Assembly (NCBI RefSeq): GCF_052425735.1
Contig: NC_135761.1
Coordinates: 2,108,001-2,172,000, forward strand
Direction: 5' to 3'
Length of the DNA: 64,000 nucleotides
Source: Oculina patagonica
Lineage: Eukaryota
In this document: positions 4,649 to 45,100 of the stretch, in pieces
How the letters are laid out: each line of letters starts with the position of its first letter
Numbering within the stretch: position 1 is the first letter of the stretch
Translations under genes and position numbers: made by a program
Notes under the pieces: generated by a model
Database searches by the model: none
What the model saw: only the letters and a program-made list of their open reading frames with translations
Told to the model about the DNA's origin: nothing

Positions 4649-5236
4649 TTAAAGGGCGCCATAACTTTTCTTCGAATGCCGGGCAATCAAAGCTGCGTTC
4701 AACCTCTTGTATTTCAGTTTATATTCATCCCTTTCTCTGGCGACTTTTCTCAATTCTTCTTTCGCCTTGAATATTTCCAACTCAAGACTCGCATTTTCTT
4801 CCGTAATATTACCAGTCTTCTCTGAGTCTTTCTTTCGACATTTCAGAGCGTATTTACGATTCTTGAGGATTCGTCTTCGCTTTCTGAGCTTTCGCATCAG
4901 CGCTTCGGGAAGTTGACGAATTTGTTTGTTGAAGGCTTGGATAGACATCTTTTCAAGCTTCTCATCGCTTATTTGTGTGATTGTTTCGCAAGGAAGATGA
5001 TTTCGGTGCTTTTGTTGTCGTTTTGCATCATGATCATGCCCCGTCGTATTCTCGGGTACCAGACCAAAGTCTTCATGCGTGTCACCGTTAAAAAGATCCT
5101 CCGTATTCGATTCATTGTTGTTCATCGTTTCCATTGCATGTAAAGGATTCCAGTTTTCCTCAGATGAACAATCTGGTTTTAAGGAATATCGAGGAATCGC
5201 GTAATCCAAAAGAAAATCCTCTTCGCTTGACTCCAT
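4649..5236 (-). CDS. Maf: Maf-family bZIP transcription factor, copy 1 (divergent subfamily C), single exon
   Basis: Extended homology region ISDEKLEKMSIQAFNKQIRQLP, basic region KRRRILKNRKYALKCRKK, large-Maf-like zipper end RERDEYKLKYKRL. Likely ATG 5236 (MESSEEDFLL); the in-frame ATG at 5290 lies next to the promoter motifs. Confidence 0.88.
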   Translation of the reverse strand: MESSEEDFLLDYAIPRYSLKPDCSSEENWNPLHAMETMNNNESNTEDLFNGDTHEDFGLVPENTTGHDHDAKRQQKHRNHLPCETITQISDEKLEKMSIQAFNKQIRQLPEALMRKLRKRRRILKNRKYALKCRKKDSEKTGNITEENASLELEIFKAKEELRKVARERDEYKLKYKRLNAALIARHSKKSYGAL

Positions 5237-5297
5237 GTCTGAAACGTAATAACCTTTAGTTGTGTATTTGCAGTCATAACACGAAAGCATCTGTCAT

Positions 5298-8073: not shown

Positions 8074-8658
8074 CTAACGACAAGGCAGCGACTCTGAAGC
8101 TTCCGTCCCCTGCTTGTATACAGCAATGGATTGCTGCAACAGCAGATATTTTCTCTTGTATGCCTCCTTCTCTTTCCAAATCTTCAACAATTTCCATTTC
8201 CCGCCTTCCACCTGCTTCTTCAACAAGGTATTCTCATTCATCAGATCTTCCTGCTCTCGTTGTTTTCGCAGTCGACAAGTCAGGGCGTAACCCCGATTTT
8301 TCAGGTTTCTTCGCCGTTTTCTTATCCTTGCTGCCTCGTCCCATGGAATGTTCCGAAGACGTTTGTTCAGCTCTGAAACCCGAAGGTTTGCTATTTCTTC
8401 GTCGGTGATTACCTTTGCATCTCGGGTGCTCGATTCGTCGTCCCATGACACCGAGGATGCGTTGTCATCGTCCTGATCCACTTCTGGGTTTGTTTCACCG
8501 TCGAACAGATCTTGGATGTCGCGGTCATCTTGGTCGTCGGCCATCTTGTTGTTGTCCTCAGACAAAACGCTTTCCTGAATCCATGAAGAATCAAAAAGAG
8601 TGTTCGTCTTTTCACTGGGGAGATACAAATCAAACAGGTCACTGCAGTCTTCTTCCAT
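8074..8658 (-). CDS. Maf: Maf-family bZIP transcription factor, copy 2 (subfamily A), single exon, about 194 aa
   Basis: ITDEEIANLRVSELNKRLRNIP (EHR), RKRRRNLKNRGYALTCRLRK (Maf NRGYA signature), zipper ending EAYKRKYLLL; ATG at 8658 (the ORF track start is non-ATG). Confidence 0.92.
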   Translation of the reverse strand: MEEDCSDLFDLYLPSEKTNTLFDSSWIQESVLSEDNNKMADDQDDRDIQDLFDGETNPEVDQDDDNASSVSWDDESSTRDAKVITDEEIANLRVSELNKRLRNIPWDEAARIRKRRRNLKNRGYALTCRLRKQREQEDLMNENTLLKKQVEGGKWKLLKIWKEKEAYKRKYLLLQQSIAVYKQGTEASESLPCR

Positions 8659-8768
8659 ATTATCAGGTAGTGACAAACTCGAAACTGCAGTATTTTTACG
8701 ATAAACACGGAACGTCGAATGAATGACTCAATACTCTAGCAAGCAGTGATCTGTATGTTACTTTCCAA

Positions 8769-10573: not shown

Positions 10574-11158
10574 CTAGGGACAAGGCAGCGACTCTGAAGC
10601 TTCCATTCCCTGCTTATGCACAGCAAATAATTGCTGCAACAGCAGATATTTTCGCTTGTATGCCTCCTTCTCTTTCCAAATCTTCAACACCTTCAATTTT
10701 CCGTCTCCCACCTGTTTCTTCAACAAGGTATTCTCATTCATCAGATCTTCCTGCTCTCGTTGTTTTCGCAGTCGACAAGTCAGGGCGTAACCCCGATTTT
10801 TCAGGTTTCTTCGCCGTTTTCTTATCCTTGCTGCCTCGTTCCATGGAATGTTCCGAAGATGCTTGTTCAGCTCTGAGACCCGAAGGTTTGCTATTTCTTC
10901 GTCGGTGATTTCCCTTGTATCTCGGGTGCTCGATTCATCGCCCCATGACACAGAGGACTCGTTGTCATCATCCTGGTCCACTTCCGGGTTTGTTTTACCG
11001 TCGAACAGATCTTGGATGTCGCGGTCATCTTGGTCGTAGGCCATCTTGTTGTTGTCCTCAGACAAAACACTTTCCCGAATCCATGAAGAATCAAAAAGAG
11101 TGTTTGTCTCTTCACTGGCGAGATACAAATCCAGCATGTCACAGCGGTCTTCTTCCAT
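10574..11158 (-). CDS. Maf: Maf-family bZIP transcription factor, copy 3 (subfamily A), single exon
   Basis: Close paralog of copy 2; KNRGYALTCR; ATG at 11158. Confidence 0.92.
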   Translation of the reverse strand: MEEDRCDMLDLYLASEETNTLFDSSWIRESVLSEDNNKMAYDQDDRDIQDLFDGKTNPEVDQDDDNESSVSWGDESSTRDTREITDEEIANLRVSELNKHLRNIPWNEAARIRKRRRNLKNRGYALTCRLRKQREQEDLMNENTLLKKQVGDGKLKVLKIWKEKEAYKRKYLLLQQLFAVHKQGMEASESLPCP

Positions 11159-11271
11159 GTTAATATCAGCTGGTGACAAAAATGAAACTGTGCTATTCTT
11201 GCGAGAAACACGGAACGTCGAAGAAATGCCTCAATATTCTAGTAAGCAGTGATCTGTATGTTATTTTCAAA

Positions 11272-13055: not shown

Positions 13056-13640
13056 CTAGCGAAAAGACAGCGACTCTGTAGCTTCCATTCCTTGCTTGTG
13101 CACAGCAATAGATTGCTGTAACAGCAGATATTTTCTCTTGTATGCCTCCTTCTCCTTCCAAATCTTCAGCACCTTCAATTTTCCGTCTTCCACCTGCTTC
13201 TTCAACAAGGTATTCTCATTCATCAGATCTTCCTGTTCTCGTTGTTTTCGCAGTCGACAAGTCAGGGCGTAACCCCGATTTTTCAGGTTTCTTCGTCGTT
13301 TTCTTATCTTTGCTGCCTCGTCCCACGGAATGTTCTGAAGACGCTTGTTAAGCTCTGAGACCCGAAGGTTTGCGATTTGTTCGTCGGTGATTTCCTTTGC
13401 ATCTCCGGGGCTCGATTCGTCGCCCCATGACACCGAGGATGCGTTGTCATCGTCTTGATTGACTTCCAGGTTTGTTTCACCGTTGAACAGATCTTGGATG
13501 TCGCGGTCATTTTTGTCGTCGGCCATCTTGTTGTTGTCCTCAGACAAAACGCTTTCTTCAGGCCAAGGAGAATAAAAAGCAGTGTTTGTCACCTCACTGG
13601 CGAGATACAAATCAAGCATATCACTGCAATCTTCCTCCAT
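13056..13640 (-). CDS. Maf: Maf-family bZIP transcription factor, copy 4 (subfamily A), single exon
   Basis: Close paralog of copies 2 and 3; KNRGYALTCR; ATG at 13640. Confidence 0.92.
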   Translation of the reverse strand: MEEDCSDMLDLYLASEVTNTAFYSPWPEESVLSEDNNKMADDKNDRDIQDLFNGETNLEVNQDDDNASSVSWGDESSPGDAKEITDEQIANLRVSELNKRLQNIPWDEAAKIRKRRRNLKNRGYALTCRLRKQREQEDLMNENTLLKKQVEDGKLKVLKIWKEKEAYKRKYLLLQQSIAVHKQGMEATESLSFR

Positions 13641-13780
13641 GTTATCAGTTGAAGACAAAATTAAGGTGTTCAGTTTTTTTCGAAACTGCAGTACACGTAA
13701 CGAAGAAATGACTCAGTCGTTTAGCAAATACTTCGTGCATCAATTAAACGCTTCTTGCATCAGAACGATGCCAAATGCCA

Positions 13781-17522: not shown

Positions 17523-18098
17523 TCAGCCTTTAGACGTAGGTAGCGTATAAGCAATAAAAGTCTTGTGCAATTGTTGTTCTAAATGTTCTAATTTCCTCTT
17601 GTACATGTCCCTGTCCTTCGCTGCATTACAAAGGTTTTCTTTTGCCTCGCGTAGCTGTGCTTTCAAGCGTTGGTTTTGTACTTCGAGGCTTTCCTTCATC
17701 GCTGTTCGCCTCTGTCGACAACTCGTGGCATAACCTCGGTTCTTCAAACTTCGCCTCCTCTTTCGGATCCTATGGGCCTCCACTTTCGGCAAACTTTTCA
17801 GCCGCTTGTTAAGATCTCGTATTGACATCTTAATCAAGTCCTCGTCGGAAAACAGTTCGCTATAAGCTTGCAAATTCTGTGGGCTTTGAGGCTCGCTGCT
17901 AATAGTGGACGCCGAGTCATCGAAGCCGTCGAGATTTAGTCGCGTCTGCAACAGAAGGTTCTCCAGGTTGTCTTCGCCAACAAGGTCTCCCAAACGGTGG
18001 CTCTGCGACCAGTTAGAACTGCAAACATCATTAGTATATTCCCTTTCCAGAATTTCGTCCATCGGCGAAATATCAGAGAAGAGTTCGTCGTAATCCAT
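17523..18098 (-). CDS. Maf: Maf-family bZIP transcription factor, copy 5 (subfamily B), single exon
   Basis: FSDEDLIKMSIRDLNKRLKSLP followed by RKRRRSLKNRGYATSCRQRR; ATG at 18098 (MDYDELFSD). Confidence 0.93.
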   Translation of the reverse strand: MDYDELFSDISPMDEILEREYTNDVCSSNWSQSHRLGDLVGEDNLENLLLQTRLNLDGFDDSASTISSEPQSPQNLQAYSELFSDEDLIKMSIRDLNKRLKSLPKVEAHRIRKRRRSLKNRGYATSCRQRRTAMKESLEVQNQRLKAQLREAKENLCNAAKDRDMYKRKLEHLEQQLHKTFIAYTLPTSKG

Positions 18099-18201
18099 GT
18101 TAACTAACTTGCGATCAAACCCGAAATGAAACACCTGATTGTACAAAGTCGAGCGTTATTTGATTAAAATCGGTTAACCGCTGGGGGTCGCTTGTATTCA
18201 T

Positions 18202-20864: not shown

Positions 20865-20939
20865 GGGGATTCCCCGTTACGTAACCATAAGTGGGTGTAG
20901 CCAAAAATCAAATCTGTCAAAACTCCGCGCTCTGATTGG
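20865..20939 (+). promoter_or_regulatory. Maf copy 6 promoter: kB site, PAR/NFIL3-type palindrome and CCAAT box
   Basis: GGGGATTCCCC 20865-20875 abutting GTTACGTAAC 20876-20885; CTGTCAAAA...TCTGATTGG (to 20939) is shared with the copy 5 promoter. Confidence 0.75.
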
Positions 20940-21002
20940 ATGCAAGATGGATTTCCATCATGGACCCGGCCATGTGTTCATTTTACTGCTACTGGGCGCA
21001 GG

Positions 21003-21575
21003 ATGGTGAGCGAAGTGCTTTTTGCTGATGTGTCGCCCATGGACGAAATTTTGGAAAGGGATTTCACTGATAATGACTGTACTTCAAGCTGGATTCAAAG
21101 CAATTGTTTACAAGAGCTTTTTAGCGAGAAAGACGATATGGAAAACACTTTGTTGCAGTCGCCACTAAGCCATTTTGATGGCGCTGAGTCCGCCACGAGC
21201 AGCGAGCCTCAAAGCCTGCAAAGTTTGCAAGATTTCAGCCAAGAAATCACCGATGACGAGTTAACGAACTTATCCATACGGGATCTAAACCAACGCTTGA
21301 AAAGTTTACCGAAAGAGGAGGCTCAGAAGATTAGAAGGCGAAGAAGAAGCTTGAAAAACCGTGGCTACGCTACGAGCTGTAGACAGAGGCGCACAGCATT
21401 AAAGGAAAGCCTGCAAACAGAAAACCAGCGCTTGAAAGATCAGATACGCGAGGCAAAAGATCACCTTTGCAAGGCAGTGAGAGATAGGGACTCTTACAAA
21501 ACGAAATTCGACCAGTTAAACAAAGTTTATGCAACGTTAAATACACCTTCTTTTGTTATGAAACATAAACAGTGA
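21003..21575 (+). CDS. Maf: Maf-family bZIP transcription factor, copy 6 (subfamily B), single exon
   Basis: ITDDELTNLSIRDLNQRLKSLP followed by RRRRRSLKNRGYATSCRQRR; the N-terminus aligns with copy 5 from ATG 21003 (ATG 20940 abuts the CCAAT box). Confidence 0.93.
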   Translation: MVSEVLFADVSPMDEILERDFTDNDCTSSWIQSNCLQELFSEKDDMENTLLQSPLSHFDGAESATSSEPQSLQSLQDFSQEITDDELTNLSIRDLNQRLKSLPKEEAQKIRRRRRSLKNRGYATSCRQRRTALKESLQTENQRLKDQIREAKDHLCKAVRDRDSYKTKFDQLNKVYATLNTPSFVMKHKQ

Positions 21576-24375
21576 TGGCAATTGTGAAGACATAAGTATT
21601 ATAGTGGAACGAGGAACTTTATATTATTGAGTTAAGTCATACGTGATTGTGGACTATAAATAACAGAGATTGGAGTTATGCGGGTGAATTGCAGCGATTG
21701 TCCATTTTATAATTCTAACTGTGATATCGGATGAAGGTTAGTCTAAATTCTTATTTCATATGTATTTTGTTCATTCATTGCTGCTGAGTCATCACGATTG
21801 GGAAGCAAGGCGTATTCTCTCCCGGTCACACTTTTCAAAGTAACGTTAAGAGTAAAAATGTTTCGTTTTTTATTTGCATAGCAATGTTGTACGTTTCAAA
21901 CATATAATTGTTTTCCGTGTGTTATTTTGATTGTAAACTGCTGATCCAAACGATTCCGCTTAAGCCCGGGATAAAAACGATGTTGACGAGATGCCATGCC
22001 ATGTGATGCATTTAGATTTTTGTTTACGATAGCAAAGTTATACCAGGCCGTGATATCAAGACAACACTCTTGGGCATTATTTTCTTTAAATAAGATGTAA
22101 ACTTCTTGCGCTTTTGTTTGTGATAAGCCATGTAAATAGCCGTGAAGAGCAAAAATCGTATAAACTTGTATGGGGAATTGTACATAATGTATACTTGAGA
22201 AATGGTCTGAAAACAAGTGTATTGAAACTAAATGATATGTTCTTGAATGAAGCAAAATTTGTCGAAATGTAAGCATTGTAATTCATTTACAAAGTTAACA
22301 GAGACATTACTTTTTTGGTCATTCGAGGGTTTAGTTTTTTTTATATTTGTTTGGCGTAGTGAATATTTAGTTTCTACATCGTTCTACATGTATATAAAAC
22401 TATATTTGTACATTTAAAGTCTTTATTTTTGAACGTCGCAAAACGCAATCCCACTAACTCAGTTGCAATTAAGCTTCCAAGTTTACAAACTGGGCAAATG
22501 AAAGTTAAGATAGTTACAAATAAGAAACGTATAACTACAGTTTTGAACACAAATTGCAACTTTGTTGTTTTGAATGTATTGTGTAAACCACGGGTTGAAA
22601 TTACACTAGGAATAATTTCAGGAGTTCTGTACAAAACTCTTGAGGACTTTTTGTAAATAAACTGAGAGCTCAACACTTGTGTGATGGCAATGTCTAGTAG
22701 CTTCTTAAAATATCGCACCCTAGCCCACTTAATTATAAGATAAGGTTAAGAGGAAATGACTGTGAACTTATAAGCAATGTCATATTAAGGGAAAACCACA
22801 AATTTAGAGTTGCTGGTGTTTACCAGTACTGATGCTGCCCGTTTAAGATATATCACTGCTTTTCGATGTATACATTTTGTGAAAACCGCAGGGGTATTTA
22901 AAACTCGAGGCTGGACTCTGACATGTCTTTCATCGAGCTGTTTACGATGTAACCTTCAAGTTATCCTTCTCTCAGTATTTAATTTGGCTTGCAGCTCTTG
23001 TAAAAAATTTTCTTCACAGCTAGTGCTCAACTTCAAGTTCCTTGACAACATCAAAATATTAGTGTTTAGCAGAGCTGAGTGTGGCAACGGTCAGATAAAC
23101 CGGAAGCTCTGTGATCACGTGGTTGTTTCTGATTTACCCTTTAAGGCCAAGGGCCAACATACACATCCCCCCTCCCCCTCCCCCACTGGCTTTAATATAT
23201 CAGATTGTATTAGTAAGGATAATTGTTTTAATAATTTAACAATTCCTAGTGACGATCTGCTGAATTCTCAACACGTTAAATACAATGAAATTTTTTTGTT
23301 GCTCACCCTTAGGCTTAAAGAGCTTTTGTCAGGTGAAAATATAAACTTAAAGGGCAGCCTTCAAATTTAATTTTTTGTTTTTTCTGTATTTAAAGGTGCT
23401 TACCTCTGTTAAAATAATTATTTATTCTACCTCTATTTCAACTTATAGGAATGTAACTGTAAAGGTGGCCATTCGAAATGCTAATATACTTAATAAATCA
23501 AAACACACATGTTTAGCCTGTCACCATGGACCTCCTCCTTTCTACAGGGCTGTCTTGGACACTTACAAATGTTTTCGAGCATGAATTTTGCTTACACTTG
23601 AAGTGAAGTTAGGGTCATGTATGGTTATTTAAAACCTATGAAGTAATTGATTCAAGGACCTCAACTTTATTTCCGCGTCTCGTGCGAAAGTTAAGCCAGT
23701 GGCAGTCTGTGGTTAGAAACCTATTTCCACTGACCAATCACAGCGTGCGCAGGTTAGACTTTCCACAAGGCCGCCGCAATCGAGCACTTTTTCCCCTTCG
23801 AGAACTTGTGATTTTGGCAATCCAACCGAAGATCCCGAAGAACAAGTGGCGCACGACGTCCGAAGAACGAAGGCCGAACCGAGGAACACGAAGACCTCGG
23901 CCCAAACAACACCGCCAGCGCTCCGATATCTCACGACTCAGTCAAAATCCTGTAGATAAGATGATGCACCCCAAAGGGAAATAGCAGAAGATAGAAGAGC
24001 GTTGGAGGGTGAGCCTATCAGAAGTGGAATGGATCAACTTGAGAACTTTGAGAAATACGGGCAACTTTGGGAAATCTCGAGCACTGTGGAAAGCCCTAGC
24101 GCAGGTGCATGCCAGCGAGGACGAAAGCAAGAACTGAAAAAAAGAAAAAAAAAGAAAAAATAACTGAGCGGCAACGACAATCGACATAAATATTTAAAAC
24201 AAATTACATAGAGGAAGACTTTCGTTTTAAACCTGTCGCTAGACCAATTTATAGAAAGTAACATATTATTTGAGCTTGATCACAAAAAGCCCGCCGATCG
24301 ATTGTCAGTAGGATTTCAAATTGTGGTTATTTTTCTGACAAGGCAGAAAGTTATGATTGCCTCATGGCGGCAGAA

Positions 24376-24499
24376 TTCTTGGAAGGCTTTTCGAAAATTC
24401 TAAGAACTTTATTATTAGGGGATTCCCCCCGAGCAATGAAAATGAAACTTTTCCTCCTGGGAGATTTGATTTGCTGGCAGGAAATTGGGGAAAACTCCC
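24376..24499 (+). promoter_or_regulatory. Maf copy 7 promoter: two GAS motifs, kB site, ISRE and a second kB-like site
   Basis: TTCTTGGAA 24376-24384; TTCTAAGAA 24398-24406; GGGGATTCCCC 24418-24428; GAAAATGAAACT 24438-24449; GGGGAAAACTCCC 24487-24499. Confidence 0.75.
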
Positions 24500-24583
24500 A
24501 CTAAAACACCGAGTCATTGTAGTTTTCGTGAAAAGCAACAGTCATTTGCAACACTGGATATTTTAACCTTTACTGACAATAAT

Positions 24584-25171
24584 ATGGAGGGAAATTTTGA
24601 CGACGTATTTGATTTGTATCTCACTGGCGAGGGGCAGCGCATTTTGGAACCTCCATGGACAGAACGAGCCAGTTTGTTCGAAAGAAACAATTATTGCAAC
24701 ACAGGTGCTATCGGTGAAGATCGCGATATCCAAGACCTTTTCGACGGTGAAACAACCAACAATTTGAAAGCAAATGACTCTTCATCTGAATCTGAAACCG
24801 AGAACTTGCTACCTCCTCGTGATGCTAAAGAAATAAGCGACAAAGAAATACAAGGTCTCCGCGTACAAGATCTTAACAAGCTTCTTCGGGACCTCCCGAG
24901 GGACGAGGCGGCAAAGATAAGAAAGAGGCGACGTAACTTGAAGAACCGAAGCTATGCCCTGACATGTCGCCTTCGGAAACAGCGAGAGCACGAAGATCTG
25001 ATGAACGAGAATACCTCATTGAAAAGACAACTGGAAGATGAAAGAAGAAAGCTGAGGAACGTGTGGAATGAGAAAGAAGAGTACAAAAGAAAATATGTAC
25101 AGTTGCAGAGGGCCTTTACTGTTTACAAGCAAAACAAGAAGACAGGTCTGAAGATGTCACCATGTCGCTAA
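24584..25171 (+). CDS. Maf: Maf-family bZIP transcription factor, copy 7 (subfamily A, diverged), single exon
   Basis: MEGNFDDVFDLYL...DRDIQDLFDGET...ISDKEIQGLRVQDLNKLLRDLP followed by RKRRRNLKNRSYALTCRLRK; ATG at 24584. Confidence 0.92.
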   Translation: MEGNFDDVFDLYLTGEGQRILEPPWTERASLFERNNYCNTGAIGEDRDIQDLFDGETTNNLKANDSSSESETENLLPPRDAKEISDKEIQGLRVQDLNKLLRDLPRDEAAKIRKRRRNLKNRSYALTCRLRKQREHEDLMNENTSLKRQLEDERRKLRNVWNEKEEYKRKYVQLQRAFTVYKQNKKTGLKMSPCR

Positions 25172-27345
25172 AGACTGTCCTGTATTCTGCAATGTATTCT
25201 TTACCTACACATTGACAGCTTACACAAAATTATACAGACTAAATACTTCCTGGTATATTTGCATTGGTAGGCGCTTTGGTTGCTTTACAATATACCAACC
25301 AAAACTTCAAGGTTTTTTAATTAACCGTTTTGCACAAGACTCGTTTATTTTCACGAATCAACTTCGCAAACCGATAGCAACCAGCAAGCAGTAATTAATC
25401 AAACAATTGTGAGCTCGATATAAACAAAAAAACAACGTACGTGTGTAATTTAAAGAAGCATCGTTTTTCTAATCAAAATGACACATTTATAACATAGATA
25501 AAAATATATATTTGTAAGAGAGAGAATGTATGATAATCTCGGTAGTAAGTAAGCAGTGCACAACCATCTCACTACATGTTCAATACTTATTTATTGTTTC
25601 GTACATTTTTAATTGACAGTAAGAGTCACAAAAACAGCAGCTTTAGGTTATGGTGGTTCGTGATGTTTTAACAGAGTGAGGGACGAACGTGAAAAAGGAA
25701 TTTGAATCGCTTTTTCGAACGCGAGCTACGCACACCGCAATATTTCAGGCTGTAAATATACTGTATAACACTCTCTATAAATAGCTCAGGGGATATTCTA
25801 AAAATTACGTAACGAAACCTGCTGCCAAAAATAGCTGTTTTTTAAGCCTGTAAATATCATGTATAAATCTAGAAAATGATGTAAAGCTCTAATATATATC
25901 CCAGTTACACCAAATGGAAGACGTATTAGTTAAAACAAGTTTATAAAAATAAAAATAAAAATAAAATAAAATATAGCCTGGGAAAATCGAAAGGCTGAAT
26001 ATGACGCAAGATCAGAAATAAGTTCCACTTTTTATCTCTCTTTTTATTATATCAAAACGTCTGTTTTAAGCTATTTGAGGCATGTTTAACTGTTCAGTTT
26101 TTAAATTACGGTGTCTTTCCTCGTTCGATATCTACACGACAAAAGCGAAATTATCGAGACATTTTCACTGTCATCTCTCTCAAAAAAAAAAGCGAAATGA
26201 CCAAGACAATTTCTTTTCTTTTTCTTTTCTTTTTGTTTTTTGTTTTTTGGCTTTTGATAATACCCTGGTCCGAGGGGTTTTCGAGTAACTAAAAAAAGAG
26301 AGAAAAAGAATAGAGAAAACCTCTGGAAAAAGAGTATTTTGGTTATTAGTTTACTCATCAAAAGTACTGTTATATAGTGAGCAGCACGCAGCAACGAATC
26401 CCAGGCTGAATTCATTTTAATTTTTCCCACTAGACCGATTTTAACAATTTTTAAAAACCTTTAAAATCAAGTTCTCTTAAGGGTACAGGCAACATTTTCT
26501 CGAAAATTAACGAAGGTCAATAGACAACACCCAACTCTCCCTCCCTCGTTCCCAATTGACACCCGTGTGTTGTCAGTGGTATACAGGTTGTCTAAGGATC
26601 CATATTGTCATGATTAATATTTAATAGTCTTCTTTCATTCTTGTCATCTAAAAATATAACAAAAAATCTATTAGTTGAACTTTAGATTATCCTTGTACAG
26701 TTTTCTGTCCCCTTGATTTGAACTCTCTGTTTCACAAACAAACATAAAGAATTCTCTCGCGCGACCAAACCACGCGAATAACAAGCAAAAGCAAAACGTG
26801 AACTTTTGGACTGAAAAGACGCGAATCAATGAAAGGTAAGATTTGCAGCTTTAAGATCATCTTTTGACTTATTCGAAGATTTGGATTGTTTCTTGTGGTG
26901 ATATATTGGCAATTTTCCATACAAAAAAGAAAACGTTTTTAAGCTCCGAATGTTTCTCGAACTATGAGATAGATTTACATGAAGTGATGACTCTATCGCT
27001 TGAGTGATATTATTTTATTCACCATACCCTTTGCAGTATTCCTCTCTTTTGTTATATAACACTGAAACGTACTTGAAGCAATAAAAATCACAAATTTATT
27101 GGTGAGCTGATCCTACTATACCATTAAAATCTGTAATACGATCACGGATCTTATTAAAAAGAAAACGATCTTGATTAGTTCCATTATCGGATAACTAGAA
27201 CAACTTGTTATGTTTTAGAGCCGTGTATTGGTATTGCCGTGTGGCCCTCGGCTATTACTCAGCCACAGTTTTCGATCACCTCCTTTCTTTATCTTGTTCC
27301 CCAGGAAATTGAAGCGAAGCATAAAACGTGAAGCATTGGATAGCC

Positions 27346-36193: not shown

Positions 36194-39100
36194 GTAATAG
36201 TTATTATACTAGAATGACATATCTATCCTAACACCTTTTGCAAAGCCAACATGTGTTCGATGAAGATGAGCCAACAAACAGTCAGGCAGAGCAATTCAAT
36301 TAAATTTCGCGCGGCGGTTCATCAGTTGTCTGGAATCTTTTGCTTTTCCTTGACGACAACAAAGTTGACAAAGAAGGAATCGTTACCCTAAGATGACTGA
36401 ACCCCTTTAATACAGACTACAAATACAAGTTGATTTGAAAATGTAATGCGTAAATTTTTATAAAGATCTAATATACATGAAATTGTAACGAACATAATGT
36501 TTGCTTTTTTTTAAAAATGCACCTAATGGTAACGTTTGTTAATATTGATTCATCTGCAGAAGATCGAACACTCACCATAGACGTTAATCCAGCGGAATAT
36601 TCGTACATCCCGCATCCACAGAAGGAAGCGAACAAAAGGACAGAAAGATCAGCGGTGTACGATACGAACTCTTATTACAACTATCCCGAGAGGGACAATC
36701 ACTACGGGTCAAATCCCGAGAGTTCGAGCACCAGCCCATCTTACGGGACAGCGAACACAGGGTCAAACGGACAAGAGCAACTAGCAAACGCTTATGGTCA
36801 AGATAACTATGACAAGACAAGCGCTAATACAAACAGTTATTATTATAGTTCAACTCCACAAACAGCGGATAACAATACAACATCAAACAGTACCGCTTAC
36901 AATCCATATGATTCATCGCAGCGTGATAATTCATCAACATCTTCGTATAACACTCCTGATGTGTCTCCGTCGACAGAAAGCCAGTCTCAATATGGAGCGC
37001 AATATACAGCCAGTGCTTACTCGGATGCAATTAATGCGACACAAGACACTGCTTATACGGCGCAAAATATACAGAATCAAACCAATTCGTCTAATGTTTC
37101 ATCTGAGTACAGTACATCTCAAATGAATAGCACGGATAATTCATCCAGCTATCTGTCAAATGATACACAGCTTTCCGATCAACAGTCAGCGGGATACACG
37201 TACTCAGAGCAGGCGCTGGCGCCAGCTCAGACGCCTTCTTCAGCCCCAGTACCATATCCAGCTTACGCACCATACCAGGCACCTTATCCGTCACCTTACC
37301 CGGCACCTTATCCGTCACCGTACCCAGCACCTTCTTATGCACCATATCCTGCTCCATACCCGGCCTATGCACCATATTCGTATCCATCTCCTGCACCCTA
37401 TTCCCCTTACCCAGCCCCTGCTCCTGCACCTGCCGTAGAGGAAAACAAAAATAGTAAGTAAAAAGAAAGATTTTTTACACGTTTTTTTTACACGCAGAAG
37501 CACCTACTTAAATTTTTTTCACCTGCATGTATTCCATAGGCCATATGCAAGTTGCCCAAAGTTAACCCCCGAGCTTCGTATTCACGACATTTTCCTTAAT
37601 CCTCTAGTAACTTCATACTCTTTTCGAATGGGTATTATTTTTATCTTCGCTGCTTTGGGAATTCGTTCATTATAAAATTAACTAGTTTGCATTTCGGGAA
37701 GCGAAGCTTGGGAGGAGGGGGGTGGGGATAAGCTCTCTGACGTAGCTATGCATAAGGCCTATTATTAGGCCTATTATTAGACCTAATTCTCGAAATTCTT
37801 GATTGGCTATTTTATTGAATTGTATACAATTCTCTTCTTTTCTTTGAAACATTAATAAGCTCGTCTCGATATTTTTAGTCCCTACTACTCATGTCAAACG
37901 GTGTTAAAATTAAAGAAGACATAATATACCTAACATTTGAAAAAAATGGAATAACTGCCACTATAGGTTTTATAATAAACTTTACCTTTACGAATTCTTG
38001 CAGAAACATCATGTGAACTAGAGCGACAAATGGCAAAGACAATGGATGATGCTTTTGTCCCTGAATGCAAACAAGATGGCAGCTATACCGATGTGCAATG
38101 CTTTGAGCACGAATCATTTGCCAAGCAATGTTGGTGTGTGACCAGCGATGGCCAGGAAATACAAGGAACCCGGATGTCAGACGGACAGACACCCAACTGT
38201 ACCGCGATTGTCAGTGACAAGGAGAAACATCACAAGGAACCAGTTAAACCGGAACATCAGGATAAACCAGTTGAACCGGAACATCACGATGAACCAGTTG
38301 AACAGGCGAAACCACAAGAGGAATCGCCGGCTCAGAATCAGACAACGATGGAAGTTGAATTGCAAATATTTAAAAATGACACAGGTAGGCTTGTGAAAAG
38401 ATGGATTACATTTTTTCTAACTGACGAAGTATTGAACGTAGGCGAGTTATCTAGACCAACTGACTGCGTTATGAACAATTACATTTCTCATTTTTGGTTT
38501 CTAACGAATTTTAGAGTTTTTCGCCCAACTATCAACCCGTTACTTTGAGCTTGTAGTATAAATAATTGTTAAATAGCTACAAATAGATCGTGTTAAGGAG
38601 GTTTAACAGAGAAAAAGTGCAGTCAGCGTGGTATGTCATACTTTTTTTTTCTTGAATTACCACTACAGAAAAGCCGAAAACCCAATGTCAAAAAGAAAGA
38701 GACATTGCTCTTTCTCCATTTATCACGGACATCTTTGTGCCCTTGTGCGACGCGGAGGGAAAGTTTGTTCCTCTTCAGTGTTTTGAACATGACGTTTACG
38801 GCAAACAATGCTGGTGCGTGGATTCATCAGGCCAGGAAATCAAAGGAACAAGATTGGACAATGGTACAACCCCAGAATGTGGTGAGTGTAGCATGCCGGT
38901 AATAATTGTCCAGCTTTCTGCACACATTGCAGACCTATGATGCGTGATGTTCTTACTAGCTACAATTCTACACTAACGTTAATGACTCTTAACTTTCACC
39001 AAAGATAATATCATTTCAGCCGTTTTTAATTTAGTTGCATATCGTTGCCAACACCGTGAAATTCAGCCACGATTGCATAGTCATAAATGGTTCTTCAGGT

Positions 39101-42100
39101 ATTTCTTTGTACAATAGAGAATGTGTTGGCATTTTCAAGACAGATTTCTTTAGAAAGATTTGATCTGGTATCTGCATTCCTTCAAGAAGATTGCGTTAAG
39201 CATTTTGAATGGTGGGTTTAACGTTAGCAAACAGCTTTTTGGCTAGAGGTCAAAATGAACCGAATAAACTTATAAATTAACAATTTGCAAGTAGCTCGGT
39301 TCTTCTGAAATACTCTAAAGTTAGTCCAACAGAATGCGTTATCGCTAATATTGTTACTGTGTTTACCACTATCATCTTGGTGTTTTTTTTTTTACAGGTG
39401 TAGTTCACGCAGACGCCACAAATGTGCCAAGCTGCAATCTGGGTCCTTATGGCTGTTGCCATGACAATGCAACTTTCGCTAAGGGGCCGGATATGGAGGG
39501 CTGCCCTCCACGGGACAACCAGCATCCAGTACCTTTAGCTTCCGCCGTGGCACCACAGGCGCTAACTCAGTGCCAAAGAGATCAGAAGCAAGCGAAAAGT
39601 TCCGGAGCAGCGGACATATTTGTACCCGAGTGTGAACCATCTGGTCTTTATAAAGAGGTGCAGTGTTATAACTACCCAGCCAGTGGAAAAACAGACTGCT
39701 GGTGTGTCAATCAAAACAATGGCAGCGAGATTACTGGAACGAGGGTCAATACACTGACACCGAACTGTAGAGGTACATATGTTTGTATTTTAATTTATTG
39801 CTTGTTTGTTTCTTTGTTTTCGACCTTGAAATATACCGCCACCCTTATTGATTTTAGCAGTTCAGTGGAACTAAATAACTGTCCGTCTGCGAATTTGTAG
39901 AGCTTTATAGCTTAGGTAGATCTCTTTTATTTGATAGCCGATTTTATAACACTAATCCGTAATTAAAAGTACATGTAGGCCAACCCATAGTAACATTACA
40001 TATGAATACCATCAATTCTACCCGATGTTAATATCCCATGGAAAACGGACAAGCATAAATTAACCATTTCACAAAATGTTAACATCTGTGATTTTCTGTC
40101 AATATCTACAGCAAATGCCACAAGTGCACCATCTCAAACTCCTCCCACCCCACCACCCACCCCTGAAGCTACCACTCAACCTACACCACCACCCATGTAT
40201 CACGTGTACTGTCAAGTTACTTTATATGGATGTTGCCCTGACAACCGAACAGCGGCCGCTGGACCGAACCAACACGGATGTGCACAACCGCAACCACAGC
40301 CGCAACCACAGCCGCAACCTCAGCCTCAACCACAGCCACAGCCAAAACCAACAAAACCAATCACTCCGACGTTTCCTGTGGGTACGTTCAAAGATTTGAT
40401 TATGTGAAACATTTTAAAACTGCCTTTAATTAATTAAATCCATGTTTGTGTGCGCCTTTCAGTGAATCAAGCCACAAGTTTGCGTTAACCAAGCAGAGTT
40501 TTCATCCTTTGAGACTCGTATTTATCACTTTCTCTCACTTGTCGTTTGATTTTTGTGTGTTTTAACTGAAGTAATCGATCTGGAATTTTTTTTATCACAT
40601 GGGGAATTTCTGTGTTATACTTATGAACATTTTCAGGGAACATTAACTTAGTTTAGCAATCGATAAGGAAAGTTTGGTTGAAAAAGACCAGCGTTATTTT
40701 TAAGGGTTCAATGTTCCTTCAGTTTCAATTCCCTTTAATATGAACGTATGGTGTGACTGTTGCGTCTCATTTGTAGTTTTCCCGCACGTGTTTACTCATT
40801 AAATTTCTCCTCAAGTTATTTTTTTACCCAAAAGGCCCTTTGATGCATACACATATCAAATATTGTCCAAGGCATACTCCAATGTTTTATTTATTTTCAC
40901 TGTGCGTTTTGTCCACATGATAGCCTTCACCAAAGACGCTTGTGTCTCATTGTTGCTGGGCCAAGTATGGTACGAGCAGTTAACAGACAAATCATTGCTC
41001 TATCTCAAACAACTCAACAAAGAGATCGTAACAGGGGTAAGACAAAATATATGTTACTTTAATAATGCTTTAGAGAGTTTTTTAGCGACTGAATTAAGTG
41101 ACGCTAGAAACATTCCAAGCAAATAATCACAACACAGAGCTAGTATGAAAAGCGCGGGAATTATTTGCTGAATCAAACCACGATTTGCTCCACGTGATTA
41201 ACATGTGATTGTCTGTTAGAAAAATGTCGATCTTCTTGCTGATTGGTTGGAACATGCCGTATACGGGTTTTCTTCACCAGTCACAAGGCCCGTCACTCGG
41301 CAAACCAAAGCAAATACAATAATATATTTTGAAACTTTCAAAAAGCTGCTATACGAAATAAAGTGACCAAAGAAGGCGTTTACGGCTGAAAATTATGTGG
41401 TGGATTTTCTAGGCAGCTTACGGATAAATATGATACAAAGATGCCGAAAAACTTTGTATCTTCCAAAAGGTATATAAAGATTTTCAAAAGAGTTCTTAAA
41501 ATTAAAATAAGTTGGTGTTACAGTTTTGATTGCTTTAGTTTAATTTCTTATTTATTCGTTCATTTTTAGATTGTAGGAATTTACAAAGGAGTTCACCCCG
41601 ATTTTGTGTCAACTCGACTTACTGGTATCAGGTACGTAAAACTGCTCTTCTTTTCCTAACCGCCGGATTTCCATCCATAACGGTGAAATATTAAAATAGT
41701 TCTAAGATTTTATGTTATTGGCGATCAATTGCATTATCACAACCTGCTTGCTGGAGTTAAATTGCCATTTTAAGAATGAGTTAGATGTTTGATGGTGGTC
41801 AACAACCTCTATTTACGCTGCTCTCCGAAAGATAATACTTTTTTTTGTTTTCAGGAAAACGAAGAATCCCTACATGGCCAATGCCCCTTATATCATTGAA
41901 CTGTTCTTGGTGATATCTTTCCGTAAACCTGTAGCGGATCCACTTGCCACGCTAAGAGATCATCTGGTGTCCAAGAAAACGATAAATAAACGTCAAGTCA
42001 TCCCACAGTCACTGCATATGATAGGTAACTAGTTAAACTTTTTACGAATTTAATTTGTAATTTAACCTTGGAAATATTTAGAACTGCGCGCATCAAGTAA

Positions 42101-45100
42101 AAAGGCGAACAGTTAATCAGGACACTCTATATTTCAAACGGAGGCAGATAGCCCGATTTGGGGTTTGCGGGAGGTCTCAGTATGAACGTGACGGAGGCGC
42201 TTGTCCGAAATTTGAAAAGGAACCTTTAAGGACCAGAAGCCGTAAATTTTGAGCGTGGTTAAAGTTCATTTTCACCCCTAAAACATACCGAAAGGTTAGC
42301 TTGAACACTTTCAGCTTCAGCTACTAATCTTAGCTTAGTTGAACCACTAAGATCATAAACAATAGGCTTGCTAGTAATGGCCTCTACATGTGCCTATAGC
42401 ACCGTGATAAATTTTGAAAGTTGAAGTCGAACATTCTAAGGTGGTAAGATCTCTATACCATAGTCGGTTTTGTTATACAGCCCTTAACCATTTTTCGTTT
42501 GCTTTCAGTTCCTTATGATGCAAAATCCAAGTGTCCACCGAAAGGTTACAAGCCTCGTCCAGTTCCCAAGCCACATCCTGTCCCAGTGAAGCCTGCGCCA
42601 CATCCCGCACCTATCAAGCCATCTGTGAAGCCACCGGCAGTCAAACCAGCTGTGCCGAAACCCTCGCCAGCTCCACAGCCGGTCCACCCACCCGTCCAAC
42701 CTACAAAGCCACAGGTTGGTCCGCCTGTGGCATCTCTCCTAGCTCTGCACATACCTTTTGATCGACACTCGGGCCTTTTCGTTCTGGATACCTCCAACAG
42801 ATCAAACAACGGGAAAATAAACAACGTAGATGTAACGCCATTGCCACAAGCGTGTGGTTTGGTGGGTATATTTTCTAACGGCAACGTGTCCTTCAACGGA
42901 AGGAAATTCTTTCCAAAGCCGAGTGTCGCTGTTACGATCGCTATGTGGGTGAAACTGACCTCGACAGCAGGCAGACAATCGCTTTTCGACGCTATCGCTG
43001 CAGAATCTCCCAAGAAGCAAGGAAATTATCACTTTGAGGTCGTCGATGGAAGAGTGAGGTGGTTAACGCGTGATTTGGACGGCAATGAGGTGTTTAACGT
43101 CATCACAAATCAGGTGGTGGTCCCTCCCAACCAGTGGACGCATCTTGTCGGCACGTATGATAAGCAGCAAGGTCAGTTTAAGTTTTACTTACGGCGCCAG
43201 TCCCAACCTATATAGAGCTATAAACCAATCAGAACCTACAACGTGTTACCCATAGCGAGGGCGGGTAAAGTTGTGTGTATCCAGTTTAGCCCTGAATCTG
43301 ATTGGCAGAAAAGAAAAATACCTTTGATTTTATTAGCTGGATCAAGTCGTATTCTTTCTTTCTTTAAAATCAGTAAAAGCAGTTGTCGACAAACTCAAAA
43401 CCAAAACCCTAAACGAGAAAAAAAGCTGTTCTAATGTAAGGAGAGTGCTATTATTGCTTTTTAAAGGGCTCAGTTCCAAAGCCATTCCTTTACTTACCAA
43501 GGCCTGTTTTTAAACCACATTAAAACACAATAGAAACACTCAACAACTCTGAAATAAAATTTCTAACCTATTGTTTTTTTACTCCAAACAATTGTCTCTA
43601 ATTTAATTTGCCACCTAAGTGAAACAGCAAAGCCTTAGGTACTTCTCCAGTTTACAATGATATATACTACTTATTAACCGAGAGTGAGGTCATTACAGGG
43701 GAACTCAGACCGAGGCCTTGATGTATTGACCGAGCGACAGCGAGGCCTCAAGCCGAGTAGATTCCCTGTATGACCGAAGGACGAGGTTAATAAGTTTTTT
43801 TATATGGCCTTTAAGCACTATTCAAAAGAAGAGTATAATCAAGGGAAAAAACACTGGAGGTAAACTCGCCCGCTCTCTGTGGTTCTCTTCGTCGCTCATA
43901 CTAAAGAAGTATGGTATGTTATATTTTCCAGTTATTGAAAAGATTACGTTATATTTTGTCGGCATTTTTTGTTGTTTTCCCTCTCGCTAGTAGCTTTTAC
44001 TCACAACTCAAAAAACCGTCGAGCCGAGAAAAATTTTCATAATGCCCGGTCATTACAAGAAAATAATGCCCGCTCAGCAGCCAATCAGAGCGCGCGTACT
44101 ATTGTAGCCATATAATAATGTAGAATAATCACCTAACTGGGTAATCTGTCACAATATTGTTCGTTTCTTTATTTTATCATCAACAGGGATTGCCAAAATA
44201 TATGTGAATACACAGCTAGCAGGCCAAGGTAACGGCGCGGGATACCTGGCACAGGACTGGGGCGAGAGAGCGGGCATAGGAAGTCACAAAGGCAAAAGAT
44301 TCCTGGTGGGAGCAGTGGACGAAGTGTATATCTACACATCAGCTTTGACGCAAAGTCAAATCAGGGAACTGGCTTGTGTGTGCGAAGACAGCAAAGGTAA
44401 TTTAATCATTATCCGTTCAGTAACAAGTAACTAAGAGAGGAGTCATCCTTTTCCCGCCAAAAATTATGTGCCCCGTGTCACCACGGCTTGCGGTTTCCCA
44501 AATGAGCAATAACCAAAATGGCGGCAATGGCGACATGGAACGCGAGGTAACATTCAGTTTTATTTCAGTTTTCTTGTCGTTTCTTTGAAAAGTTCTTTTT
44601 GAAATGCGATCGGAAGCTCTTTTAGTGAATAACTTACCAGTCTAAAGGCAAAACAAATCGAATTCTACGAATTGAGACTGGTTTAATCGTGAGTAGCTTT
44701 TAGGCTTAGAAAAAGACGCGATTATTTTTTCTTGATTACATGCACAAATGGAACGTACCTGGAATTGATGTTTCCCTGTGCGATGGCGTTGTCTGACAGC
44801 GTAGAAAGAGAAAATCGAAGAGAACAAGAATTCGAAGCCGATTTAGTCCATCTCATTTACATTTGTTAAAACGCTTTGGGAACGAGGCAACAATAGGCGC
44901 TTTGACAATGAGATGCAAAAGAAAATGATCTCGGTATTTTAATATTTGAAGTTTGAACCTCGGAAATTTGCAGATGACTCTCGGATAATCGTGGAGAGTT
45001 GGTAAGATGCGTTATTGAATTTAGGATTAGTGAAATGTGAGGTTATCTCTTAGGGAAAAGAATACTTAAATTTTGTTTTTTGTTTGTTTGTTTGTTTTTA

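What the first reader, a model, noticed from the sequence alone, without database searches (positions are those of the whole stretch)
24376..24499. Enhanceosome-like GAS-GAS-kB-ISRE-kB module in 125 bp upstream of Maf copy 7
Seen: two GAS sites, GGGGATTCCCC, then 9 bp later GAAAATGAAACT (exact GAAANNGAAACT ISRE consensus) and a second kB-like GGGGAAAACTCCC. The CCAAT box of the paralogs is degraded here (ATTTGATTTG, about 24463). Inference: this copy replaced a constitutive NF-Y input with IRF input and may be the antiviral/nucleic-acid-responsive member.
Basis: partly seen in the sequence, partly recalled or inferred. Interest (0 to 1): 0.7.

Follow-up and report, generated by a model that had tools for sequence, protein, structure and literature searches.

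The report
Conserved immune-type switch beside coral Maf gene
A 125-base stretch just upstream of one gene in a stony coral's seven-gene Maf cluster carries sites resembling those used by the immune regulators STAT, NF-kB and IRF, and ten coral lineages have kept them almost unchanged, so it is very probably a real control element, though which proteins bind it is untested.

Summary
All the motifs sit at the stated coordinates: GAS 24376-24384 and 24398-24406, the palindromic kB site GGGGATTCCCC 24418-24428, the ISRE GAAAATGAAACT 24438-24449, the degraded CCAAT 24464-24473, and GGGGAAAACTCCC 24487-24499.

The window is a stony coral, probably Oculina patagonica. It holds seven intronless bZIP_Maf genes.

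Copy 7 belongs to a well-supported orthologue clade that also includes Desmophyllum, Pocillopora and Stylophora. In a ten-lineage alignment:
- Motif positions are far better conserved than the rest of the block (54% against 14% invariant, p about 1e-7 to 1e-9).
- The module is more conserved than four-fold degenerate coding sites.
- The IRF core AAnnGAAA is kept in 10/10 lineages.
- The CCAAT pentamer at the position homologous to the paralogues' box is absent in 10/10.
- The spacing between the two GAS sites is exactly 22 bp in 10/10.

The kB site is family-wide (22/22 promoters checked). The GAS pair is shared with subfamily A. Only the IRF-like element is specific to copy 7.

Caveats:
- No binding or expression data exist for this copy.
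- In one coral clade the module lies inside a 5'UTR intron.
- "Enhanceosome" is not supported.
- NF-Y input is not demonstrably lost, and IRF-like motifs also occur distally in the subfamily A units.

This is a new member of a known kind. The scan noted the array-wide kB and GAS features on this same window.

The parts
24376..24384 (.). GAS1, TTCTTGGAA (STAT-type TTCNNNGAA)
   Evidence: Sequence. The pattern is intact in 8/10 orthologues. It is shared with subfamily A copies c2-c4 and with L006.
24398..24406 (.). GAS2, TTCTAAGAA. With the preceding GAAAATTC it also forms an imperfect HSE-like array
   Evidence: Sequence. The pattern is intact in 6/10 orthologues. The start-to-start distance from GAS1 is 22 bp in 10/10.
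24418..24428 (.). Palindromic kB site GGGGATTCCCC (p50-homodimer type)
   Evidence: The outer G and C runs are conserved and the centre is variable across 10 lineages. A kB match lies at the equivalent place in 22/22 family promoters.
24438..24449 (+). ISRE / IRF-E-like GAAAATGAAACT
   Evidence: The six specified positions of AAnnGAAA are invariant in 10/10 lineages. The element is absent from all the paralogue promoters examined.
24464..24473 (.). Degraded inverted CCAAT box (ATTTGATTTG; paralogues have TGATTGG)
   Evidence: The CCAAT pentamer is absent here in 10/10 copy-7 orthologues, but the TGAT core is still conserved.
24487..24499 (.). GGGGAAAACTCCC, a conserved element of unknown factor. 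It is not a canonical kB site and could be an NFAT/Rel half-site. It overlaps a species-specific ATTGG at 24484-24488
   Evidence: Its specified positions average 9.4/10 conservation.
24360..24520 (+). Whole conserved non-coding block that contains the module
   Evidence: Conservation track. Module identity to the orthologues is 70-90%, against 52-73% at four-fold degenerate sites.
24584..25171 (+). Maf-like copy 7, an intronless ORF of 195 aa
   Evidence: PF03131, E = 2.9e-17. It is identical to P0001.
23640..23745 (+). Distal conserved element homologous to the 5'UTR exon and donor region of the group-B corals. It holds a conserved CCAAT at 23734-23738. The donor GT is not intact in this species

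Best explanation
The 124-bp stretch is a cis-regulatory module under purifying selection. It is either a proximal promoter or a promoter-proximal enhancer, and it controls a Maf-like bZIP gene found here only in stony corals.

The whole coral Maf-like family shares a promoter core: a palindromic p50-type kB site followed about 40-70 bp downstream by an inverted CCAAT box. The common ancestor of subfamily A and copy 7 added a tandem pair of STAT-type GAS sites. The copy-7 lineage then gained an IRF-type element 9 bp downstream of the kB site and lost the CCAAT pentamer. Both changes happened before Oculina, Desmophyllum and the pocilloporids diverged.

The most likely function is to make copy 7 an inducible, immediate-early-type transcription factor gene. 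It would integrate NF-kB, STAT-type and IRF-type signals, which is the cGAS-STING / pattern-recognition output known in cnidarians.

Shown: the motifs, their conservation, their fixed spacing and their lineage-specific distribution.
Inferred: which proteins bind, that binding activates transcription, and the inducing stimulus.
For: - Motifs are at the stated coordinates.
- Copy 7 sits in a 19-protein clade with SH-aLRT 99, distinct from subfamily A. Named members are Desmophyllum pertusum, Pocillopora verrucosa and Stylophora pistillata XP_022791102.1.
Invariant columns are 54% against 14% (Mann-Whitney p = 3e-9, Fisher p = 1.4e-7). The motif positions were chosen from the window alone, before any orthologue was seen.
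- Module identity to the orthologues is 70-90%. Four-fold degenerate sites of the same gene give 52-73%, and the distal flank gives about 50%.
- AAnnGAAA is kept in 10/10. GAS1 to GAS2 is 22 bp in 10/10. kB to the IRF half-site is 24-25 bp in 9/10.
- kB is present in 22/22 family promoters. CCAAT is present in 9/9 subfamily A and c5/c6-type promoters but in 0/10 copy-7 orthologues at the homologous position.
- Literature: sea-anemone NF-kB binds GGGAAAGCCCC, GGGAAACCCCC and GGGGAACTCCCC by EMSA and activates a reporter through them. Only 8% of random genes there have a predicted site within 500 bp (PMC10329013).
- Literature: IRF2, STAT5A and NF-kB1 belong to the cnidarian antiviral or immune-cell programme, and Maf-family genes mark Nematostella immune cells (PMC13319465).
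- Literature: a Stylophora paralogue in the same orthogroup, XP_022791093.1, shows log2FC 2.93 (padj 3e-18) after 2'3'-cGAMP.
- Literature: four consecutively numbered (probably adjacent) Maf genes rise together under heat stress in Montipora (PMC8590396).
Against: - There are no binding, chromatin or expression data for this copy in any species.
- The transcription start in the window's species is unknown.
- In the clade of L002, L003, L007 and L012, assembled transcripts (L010, L011) start in a distal exon and splice over the whole module, so there it is intronic.
- The strict ISRE GAAANNGAAAS is intact in only 4/10 lineages, and GAS2 in 6/10.
- These short motifs are also compatible with other factors: BCL6 or HSF for the TTC/GAA repeats, PRDM1 or ETS for the GAAA repeats, and NFAT for GGAAAA.
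- The Nematostella MAFA-like orthologue goes down, not up, in activated cells (supplement rows).
Confidence: 0.6

Rival explanations
1. The block is a real, conserved regulatory module, but the vertebrate-style labels are wrong. The TTC/GAA repeats and the GAAA repeats would be read by other factors (HSF, BCL6-like, PRDM1/Blimp-like, ETS, NFAT). The output would then be a general stress response, such as heat or oxidative stress, and not an antiviral one.
For: - The published coral data on Maf-like genes are mostly from heat stress: Montipora, Stylophora single-cell data, and Porites against Acropora.
- GAAAATTCTAAGAA is HSE-like in the window, L001, L008 and L013.
- GGGGAAAnnnCCC is strongly conserved yet fits no kB consensus.
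- Only 4/10 lineages keep the strict ISRE.
Against: - The HSE-like first GAA is not conserved (GCA in 6/10), whereas TTCnnnGAA is.
- The palindromic GGGGATTCCCC is a textbook p50-type site, and cnidarian NF-kB binds such sites.
- The invariant positions coincide exactly with the IRF core.
- A paralogue in Stylophora is induced by cGAMP.
Confidence: 0.22
2. The module specifies cell type and does not drive induction. It would give constitutive expression in immune-type cells, where NF-kB, IRF and STAT are resident lineage factors.
For: In Nematostella, MAFA-like and MAFG-like genes are markers of the naive immune-cell cluster (log2FC 3.19). The MAFA-like genes are lower in the comparisons shown in supplementary files 11 and 26, which appear to contrast activated with naive cells.
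Against: - A Stylophora family member is induced 7.6-fold in whole animals by cGAMP.
- Intronless, short, tandemly duplicated genes fit an immediate-early design. This point is inference only.
Confidence: 0.12
3. The conservation reflects an RNA-level function (5'UTR or intron element), or simply too little divergence, and not transcription-factor binding.
For: The block is intronic in one clade. The 985-nt contig L017 from a pocilloporid run extends 5' to just upstream of the GGGGAAA element, so part of the block may be transcribed.
Against: - There is no Rfam match.
- Conservation is concentrated in short palindromic or repeat cores with variable centres, as expected for protein-DNA contacts.
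- The module is more conserved than four-fold degenerate sites, and the flank is at background, so the lineages are diverged enough.
- The same kB core recurs in paralogues whose surrounding sequence is unalignable.
Confidence: 0.05

Closest known systems
Composite STAT + NF-kB + IRF promoters of vertebrate immediate-early immune genes (for example IRF1 and CXCL10; from my own knowledge)
   Same: A compact cluster of GAS, kB and ISRE/IRF-E consensus sites lies within about 125 bp next to an inducible transcription-factor gene. The sites are separate and the spacing between them is conserved.
   Different: The host is a cnidarian with no interferon system. The target is a coral Maf-like gene not matched here to a particular bilaterian Maf. 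The factor identities are untested. An extra conserved GGGGAAAnnnCCC element has no assigned factor.
IFN-beta enhanceosome
   Same: It combines NF-kB-type and IRF-type sites, and the kB-to-IRF spacing is nearly fixed (24-25 bp in 9/10 lineages).
   Different: The sites are not contiguous or overlapping. No ATF-2/c-Jun site is present. The module spans 124 bp, not about 55 bp. Tandem GAS sites are not part of the enhanceosome. Cooperative assembly has not been tested.
Nematostella TRAF3 promoter kB sites (PMC10329013)
   Same: It is a cnidarian promoter with GGGRNNYYCC-type sites close to the start site. That paper shows binding by cnidarian NF-kB and site-dependent reporter activation.
   Different: Here a single palindromic site is conserved across a whole tandem gene family and across coral families. 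No binding assay has been done.
Regulatory subfunctionalisation of tandem duplicates (duplication-degeneration-complementation model)
   Same: The paralogues share a kB core but differ by reciprocal presence of CCAAT (subfamily A, c5/c6) or an IRF-like element (copy 7). The difference is stable over long evolutionary time.
   Different: The polarity is only partly resolved. L006, a basal A-type promoter, has TAAAATAACT where copy 7 has GAAAATGAAACT. The element may therefore be older than the copy-7 lineage.

Membership tests
kB site (NF-kB/Rel response element) | Match to GGGRNWYYCC | tested here: met
   GGGGATTCCC and GGGATTCCCC at 24418-24428. 9 of the 10 orthologues match on the forward reading, and the tenth (L002, GGGGTGCCCC) matches on the reverse strand.
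kB site (NF-kB/Rel response element) | Bound by the organism's NF-kB | not testable with these tools
   Only an analogy is available: Nematostella NF-kB binds similar sites by EMSA (PMC10329013).
kB site (second, GGGGAAAACTCCC) | Match to GGGRNWYYCC, or 10-11 bp half-site spacing | tested here: not met
   No GGGRNWYYCC match at 24487-24499. The half-sites are 2 bp further apart than in the EMSA-proven GGGGAACTCCCC. The element is nonetheless conserved.
ISRE / IRF-E | GAAANNGAAA(C/G)(T/C) consensus | tested here: met
   Exact in the window. The strict form is intact in 4/10 lineages, and the core AAnnGAAA is invariant in 10/10.
ISRE / IRF-E | IRF binding and inducibility by virus, poly(I:C) or cGAMP | not testable with these tools
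   No data exist for copy 7 or its orthologues. The paralogue XP_022791093.1 in Stylophora is induced by cGAMP.
GAS (STAT element) | TTCNNNGAA palindrome | tested here: met
   Two sites in the window. GAS1 is intact in 8/10 lineages and GAS2 in 6/10, with at least one intact in 10/10. The spacing is fixed at 22 bp.
CCAAT box / NF-Y input | CCAAT pentamer at the position homologous to the paralogues' box | tested here: not met
   TGATTTG in the window. The pentamer is absent in 10/10 orthologues and present in 9/9 subfamily A and c5/c6-type promoters. Other CCAAT pentamers exist nearby, at 24484 and 23734.
IFN-beta-type enhanceosome | Contiguous, overlapping ATF/Jun, IRF and NF-kB sites with no spacer DNA | tested here: not met
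   Gaps of 9-37 bp separate successive sites, and no ATF/Jun site lies inside the module.
IFN-beta-type enhanceosome | Cooperative assembly | not testable with these tools
   Conserved spacing is compatible with it but does not prove it.
bZIP_Maf (the regulated gene) | Pfam PF03131 above the gathering score | tested here: met
   63.4 bits against a cut-off of 22, E = 2.9e-17.
Proximal promoter | Lies immediately upstream of a mapped transcription start | tested here: inconclusive
   No transcript was found for the window's species. In group-B corals the transcripts start in a distal exon and the module is intronic. The window lacks that donor and acceptor.

The most novel reading that the evidence does not exclude
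A fixed-geometry tandem-GAS / kB / IRF composite element has been maintained beside a coral Maf-like gene at least since the lineages compared here diverged. It would be one arm of a reciprocal regulatory split (IRF element against CCAAT box) among tandem duplicates that all keep NF-kB input. If the sites are bound by coral STAT, NF-kB and IRF, the combinatorial promoter logic of vertebrate interferon-stimulated genes existed in animals that have no interferon. It would also name a Maf-like factor as a conserved early output of cnidarian cGAS-STING signalling.
Probability: 0.3. Interest if true: 0.7.

Novelty: new member of a known kind. Interest (0 to 1): 0.5.

Why it matters
Cnidarians have NF-kB, IRF, STAT and cGAS-STING, but almost nothing is known about the DNA elements through which these factors act. 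In the paper library I searched, only four papers mention ISRE, IRF, Nematostella, motif and promoter together, and none of their titles or abstracts concerns a cnidarian ISRE.

This locus offers a compact, deeply conserved and experimentally tractable test case. Seven neighbouring genes share a kB site, and one differs by an IRF-like element. It also gives a mechanistic handle on why Maf-like genes keep appearing in coral heat-stress and immune transcriptomes.

Tried and rejected
- Transcript evidence for the window's own copy: none found.
- L017, a 985-nt contig from a pocilloporid run, may be an mRNA reaching just upstream of GGGGAAA. It cannot be told apart from a genomic contig, so I did not use it to place the start site.
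- Rfam scan of 23500-26000: no match.
- The cGLR preprint (PMC9980059) does not hold the Stylophora cGAMP RNA-seq table. The response of the true copy-7 orthologue XP_022791102.1 could therefore not be read.
- The second exact ISRE at 60023 sits in AT-rich sequence, and no kB match lies within 24 kb of it. I treated it as chance.
- Too little divergence as the explanation: rejected by the comparison with four-fold degenerate sites and the distal flank.
- A coding or uORF reading of the open frame from 24485: rejected, because the indels among orthologues are not multiples of three and conservation is not 3-periodic.
- Searches of earlier scan notes for NF-kB, IRF and STAT genes in this genome: blank.

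Full report
**What is in the sequence**

The window is eukaryotic DNA with 34-48% G+C. Earlier notes of this scan call the genome a stony coral. One family member on the same 64.4-Mb contig carries the name Oculina patagonica.

Seven intronless ORFs of about 195-213 aa all match Pfam bZIP_Maf:
- c1: 4649-5290 (-)
- c2: 8074-8676 (-)
- c3: 10574-11179 (-)
- c4: 13056-13658 (-)
- c5: 17523-18146 (-)
- c6: 20940-21575 (+)
- c7: ATG at 24584, stop at 25171 (+)

| Element | Sequence | Coordinates |
|---|---|---|
| GAS1 | TTCTTGGAA | 24376-24384 |
| GAS2 | TTCTAAGAA | 24398-24406 |
| kB | GGGGATTCCCC | 24418-24428 |
| ISRE (after nine bases) | GAAAATGAAACT | 24438-24449 |
| degraded CCAAT | ATTTGATTTG | 24464-24473 |
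| second kB-like | GGGGAAAACTCCC | 24487-24499 |

**Chance**
- GGGRNWYYCC matches 35 times in the window against 3.1 expected.
- The exact ISRE pattern matches 3 times against 0.2 expected.
- A 125-bp window with two GAS, one kB and one ISRE occurs once in the real sequence. It occurred in none of 200 Markov simulations.

**What is shared with the paralogues and what is not**

Alignment of the seven upstream regions and a motif scan show three layers.
- kB site: all seven copies have the palindromic site GGGGA(A/T)TCCCC, or GGGAATTCCCC in c2.
- CCAAT box: c2 to c6 have an inverted CCAAT (TGATTGG) about 40-70 bp downstream of the kB site. c1 and c7 have TGATTTG instead.
- GAS pair: this is shared by c2, c3, c4 and c7.
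- ISRE and GGGGAAAACTCCC: these are found only in c7.

The kB site is therefore a family trait and the GAS pair a subfamily trait. Only the IRF-like element and the loss of CCAAT are specific to c7.

**Orthologues**

A protein search returned 105 coral relatives. In a maximum-likelihood tree c7 falls in a 19-member clade (SH-aLRT 99). Its sister is an 86-member clade that holds c2-c4. Named members of the c7 clade are Desmophyllum pertusum (P0009), Pocillopora verrucosa (cluster of P0017) and Stylophora pistillata XP_022791102.1 (cluster of P0016).

I fetched genomic loci for nine further lineages of the clade and aligned their upstream regions with c7.

**Conservation**

- Motif positions average 9.0 of 10 sequences agreeing, against 7.1 for the other positions of the block.
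- 54% of motif positions are invariant, against 14% elsewhere (Mann-Whitney p = 3e-9, Fisher p = 1.4e-7).
- All six specified positions of the IRF core AAnnGAAA are invariant.
- In the kB site the outer G and C runs are kept while the centre varies, as expected for a Rel-type site.
- The module is 70-90% identical to each orthologue. Four-fold degenerate sites of the adjacent coding sequence are 52-73% identical, and the region 460-900 bp upstream is at the roughly 50% background of unrelated sequence. The block therefore evolves more slowly than synonymous sites.
- Spacing is tight. GAS1 to GAS2 is 22 bp in 10/10 lineages. GAS2 to kB is 20-22 bp. kB to the IRF half-site is 24-25 bp in 9/10.

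**The CCAAT / IRF swap**
- At the position homologous to the paralogues' CCAAT box, none of the ten c7-clade promoters has the pentamer. They read TGATTTG, TGATTCG, TGATTAG and similar.
- All nine promoters of subfamily A and c5/c6 type examined keep CCAAT, and none has GAAANNGAAAS. These are the five in the window plus L006, L001_g1014, L003_g909 and L004_g1134.
- L006, a basal A-type promoter, reads TAAAATAACT where c7 reads GAAAATGAAACT. The IRF-like element may therefore predate the split and have decayed in subfamily A. The polarity is not settled.

**Caveats found along the way**

1. The module is intronic in one clade.
 - In four lineages (L002, L003, L007, L012) a polypyrimidine-CAG acceptor lies just before the ATG.
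 - Two assembled transcripts (L010, L011) join it to an exon about 530 bp upstream, whose end has a good AAG|GTATGG donor.
 - There the whole module sits inside a 5'UTR intron.
 - The window has the homologous distal element at about 23640-23745. However, its donor reads CAGTCTGTGG and no AG precedes the ATG. This splice is therefore unlikely in the window's species, and its start site remains unmapped.
2. NF-Y input is not clearly lost. An ATTGG overlaps the GGGGAAA element at 24484-24488 (4/10 lineages have it there). A CCAAT at 23734-23738 in the distal element is conserved in L002, L003, L004 and L007.
3. Each subfamily A repeat unit has GAAACTGAAAC about 0.9-1 kb upstream of the next gene, at 7081, 9602, 12048 and 12076. 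c7 is therefore not the only copy with IRF-like motifs.
4. GGGGAAAACTCCC is not a canonical kB site. It does not match GGGRNWYYCC, and its half-sites are two bases further apart than in the sea-anemone site GGGGAACTCCCC that NF-kB binds. It is strongly conserved, but its factor is unknown.
5. The strict ISRE survives in only 4/10 lineages and GAS2 in 6/10. The TTC/GAA and GAAA repeats could serve other factors.

**Literature**
- NF-kB binding: Nematostella NF-kB binds GGGAAAGCCCC, GGGAAACCCCC and GGGGAACTCCCC in EMSA and activates the TRAF3 promoter through them. Only 8% of random genes there have a predicted site within 500 bp (PMC10329013).
- Antiviral and immune-cell programme: IRF2 and STAT5A belong to the Nematostella antiviral response, and NF-kB1 is an immune-cell marker there. 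IRF2 is also induced in Stylophora. Maf-family genes mark Nematostella immune cells (PMC13319465).
- cGAMP induction: that paper's supplement places the c7 orthologue XP_022791102.1 and the subfamily A member XP_022791098.1 in orthogroup OG0000604. It also lists a third member, XP_022791093.1, with log2FC 2.93 (padj 3e-18) after 2'3'-cGAMP in Stylophora. The value for the c7 orthologue itself is not in the held text.
- Heat stress: four consecutively numbered Maf genes rise together under heat in Montipora (PMC8590396). Maf-like genes also appear in Stylophora and Porites/Acropora heat responses.
- I found no description of this module or of a functional cnidarian ISRE.

**Verdict**

The block is a conserved cis-regulatory module.

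The most likely mechanism is inducible transcription of a Maf-like factor through NF-kB, which is family-wide, together with STAT-type and IRF-type inputs.

Three parts of the interpretation remain unsupported or untested:
- The enhanceosome analogy.
- The claim that NF-Y input was lost.
- The claim that this copy is the antiviral one.

It is a new example of a known kind of element, in a phylum where such elements are scarcely described.

Noticed in passing
L003:3266-3990 (also L002, L007, L012; transcripts L010 and L011): In one coral clade the copy-7 orthologue has a distal 5'UTR exon and an intron of about 520 bp (AAG|GTATGG ... TTCTTACAG|CAATATC) that contains the whole GAS-kB-IRF module. 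The window's species lacks both splice sites.
   Followed up: partly
window 23640-23745: A distal element is conserved with L001, L003 and L004. It is homologous to that 5'UTR exon end and carries a conserved CCAAT at 23734-23738. About 400 bp of extra sequence (about 23760-24136), followed by an A-rich tract at 24137-24160, separates it from the module and is absent in L001. This looks like an insertion.
   Followed up: partly
window 20877-20884; L001:850-857; L003:768-775: A perfect PAR-bZIP/NFIL3-type palindrome TTACGTAA lies 10-12 bp downstream of the kB site in copy 6 and in its relatives in two other corals. This is a second paralogue-specific, conserved add-on to the shared kB core.
   Followed up: no
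window 7081, 9602, 12048, 12076 (- strand): GAAACTGAAAC recurs once or twice in each subfamily A repeat unit, about 0.9-1 kb upstream of the next Maf gene. GAAANNGAAAS occurs 9 times in the window against about 2 expected.
   Followed up: partly
all 22 Maf-family promoters examined (window c1-c7; loci L001-L008, L012, L013): Every one has a GGGRNWYYCC match, usually GGGGATTCCCC, 45-200 bp upstream of the ATG. This includes the divergent c1-type genes that lack CCAAT.
   Followed up: yes
window 24487-24499 and orthologues: GGGGAAAnnnCCC is among the best-conserved elements of the block but fits no consensus I could assign. Its half-sites are spaced 2 bp wider than a kB site.
   Followed up: partly
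window 60023-60034: A second exact GAAAATGAAACT lies in AT-rich sequence, with no kB match within 24 kb. It is probably chance.
   Followed up: partly
window 36517-54328: Downstream of the Maf array lie ORF fragments with thyroglobulin type-1-like (CWCV...G..I.GT) and thrombospondin type-1-like (CS.TCG.G...R.R.C) cysteine patterns, plus a long Ser/Thr/Pro/Tyr-rich ORF. These are multi-exon extracellular protein genes unrelated to the finding.
   Followed up: no
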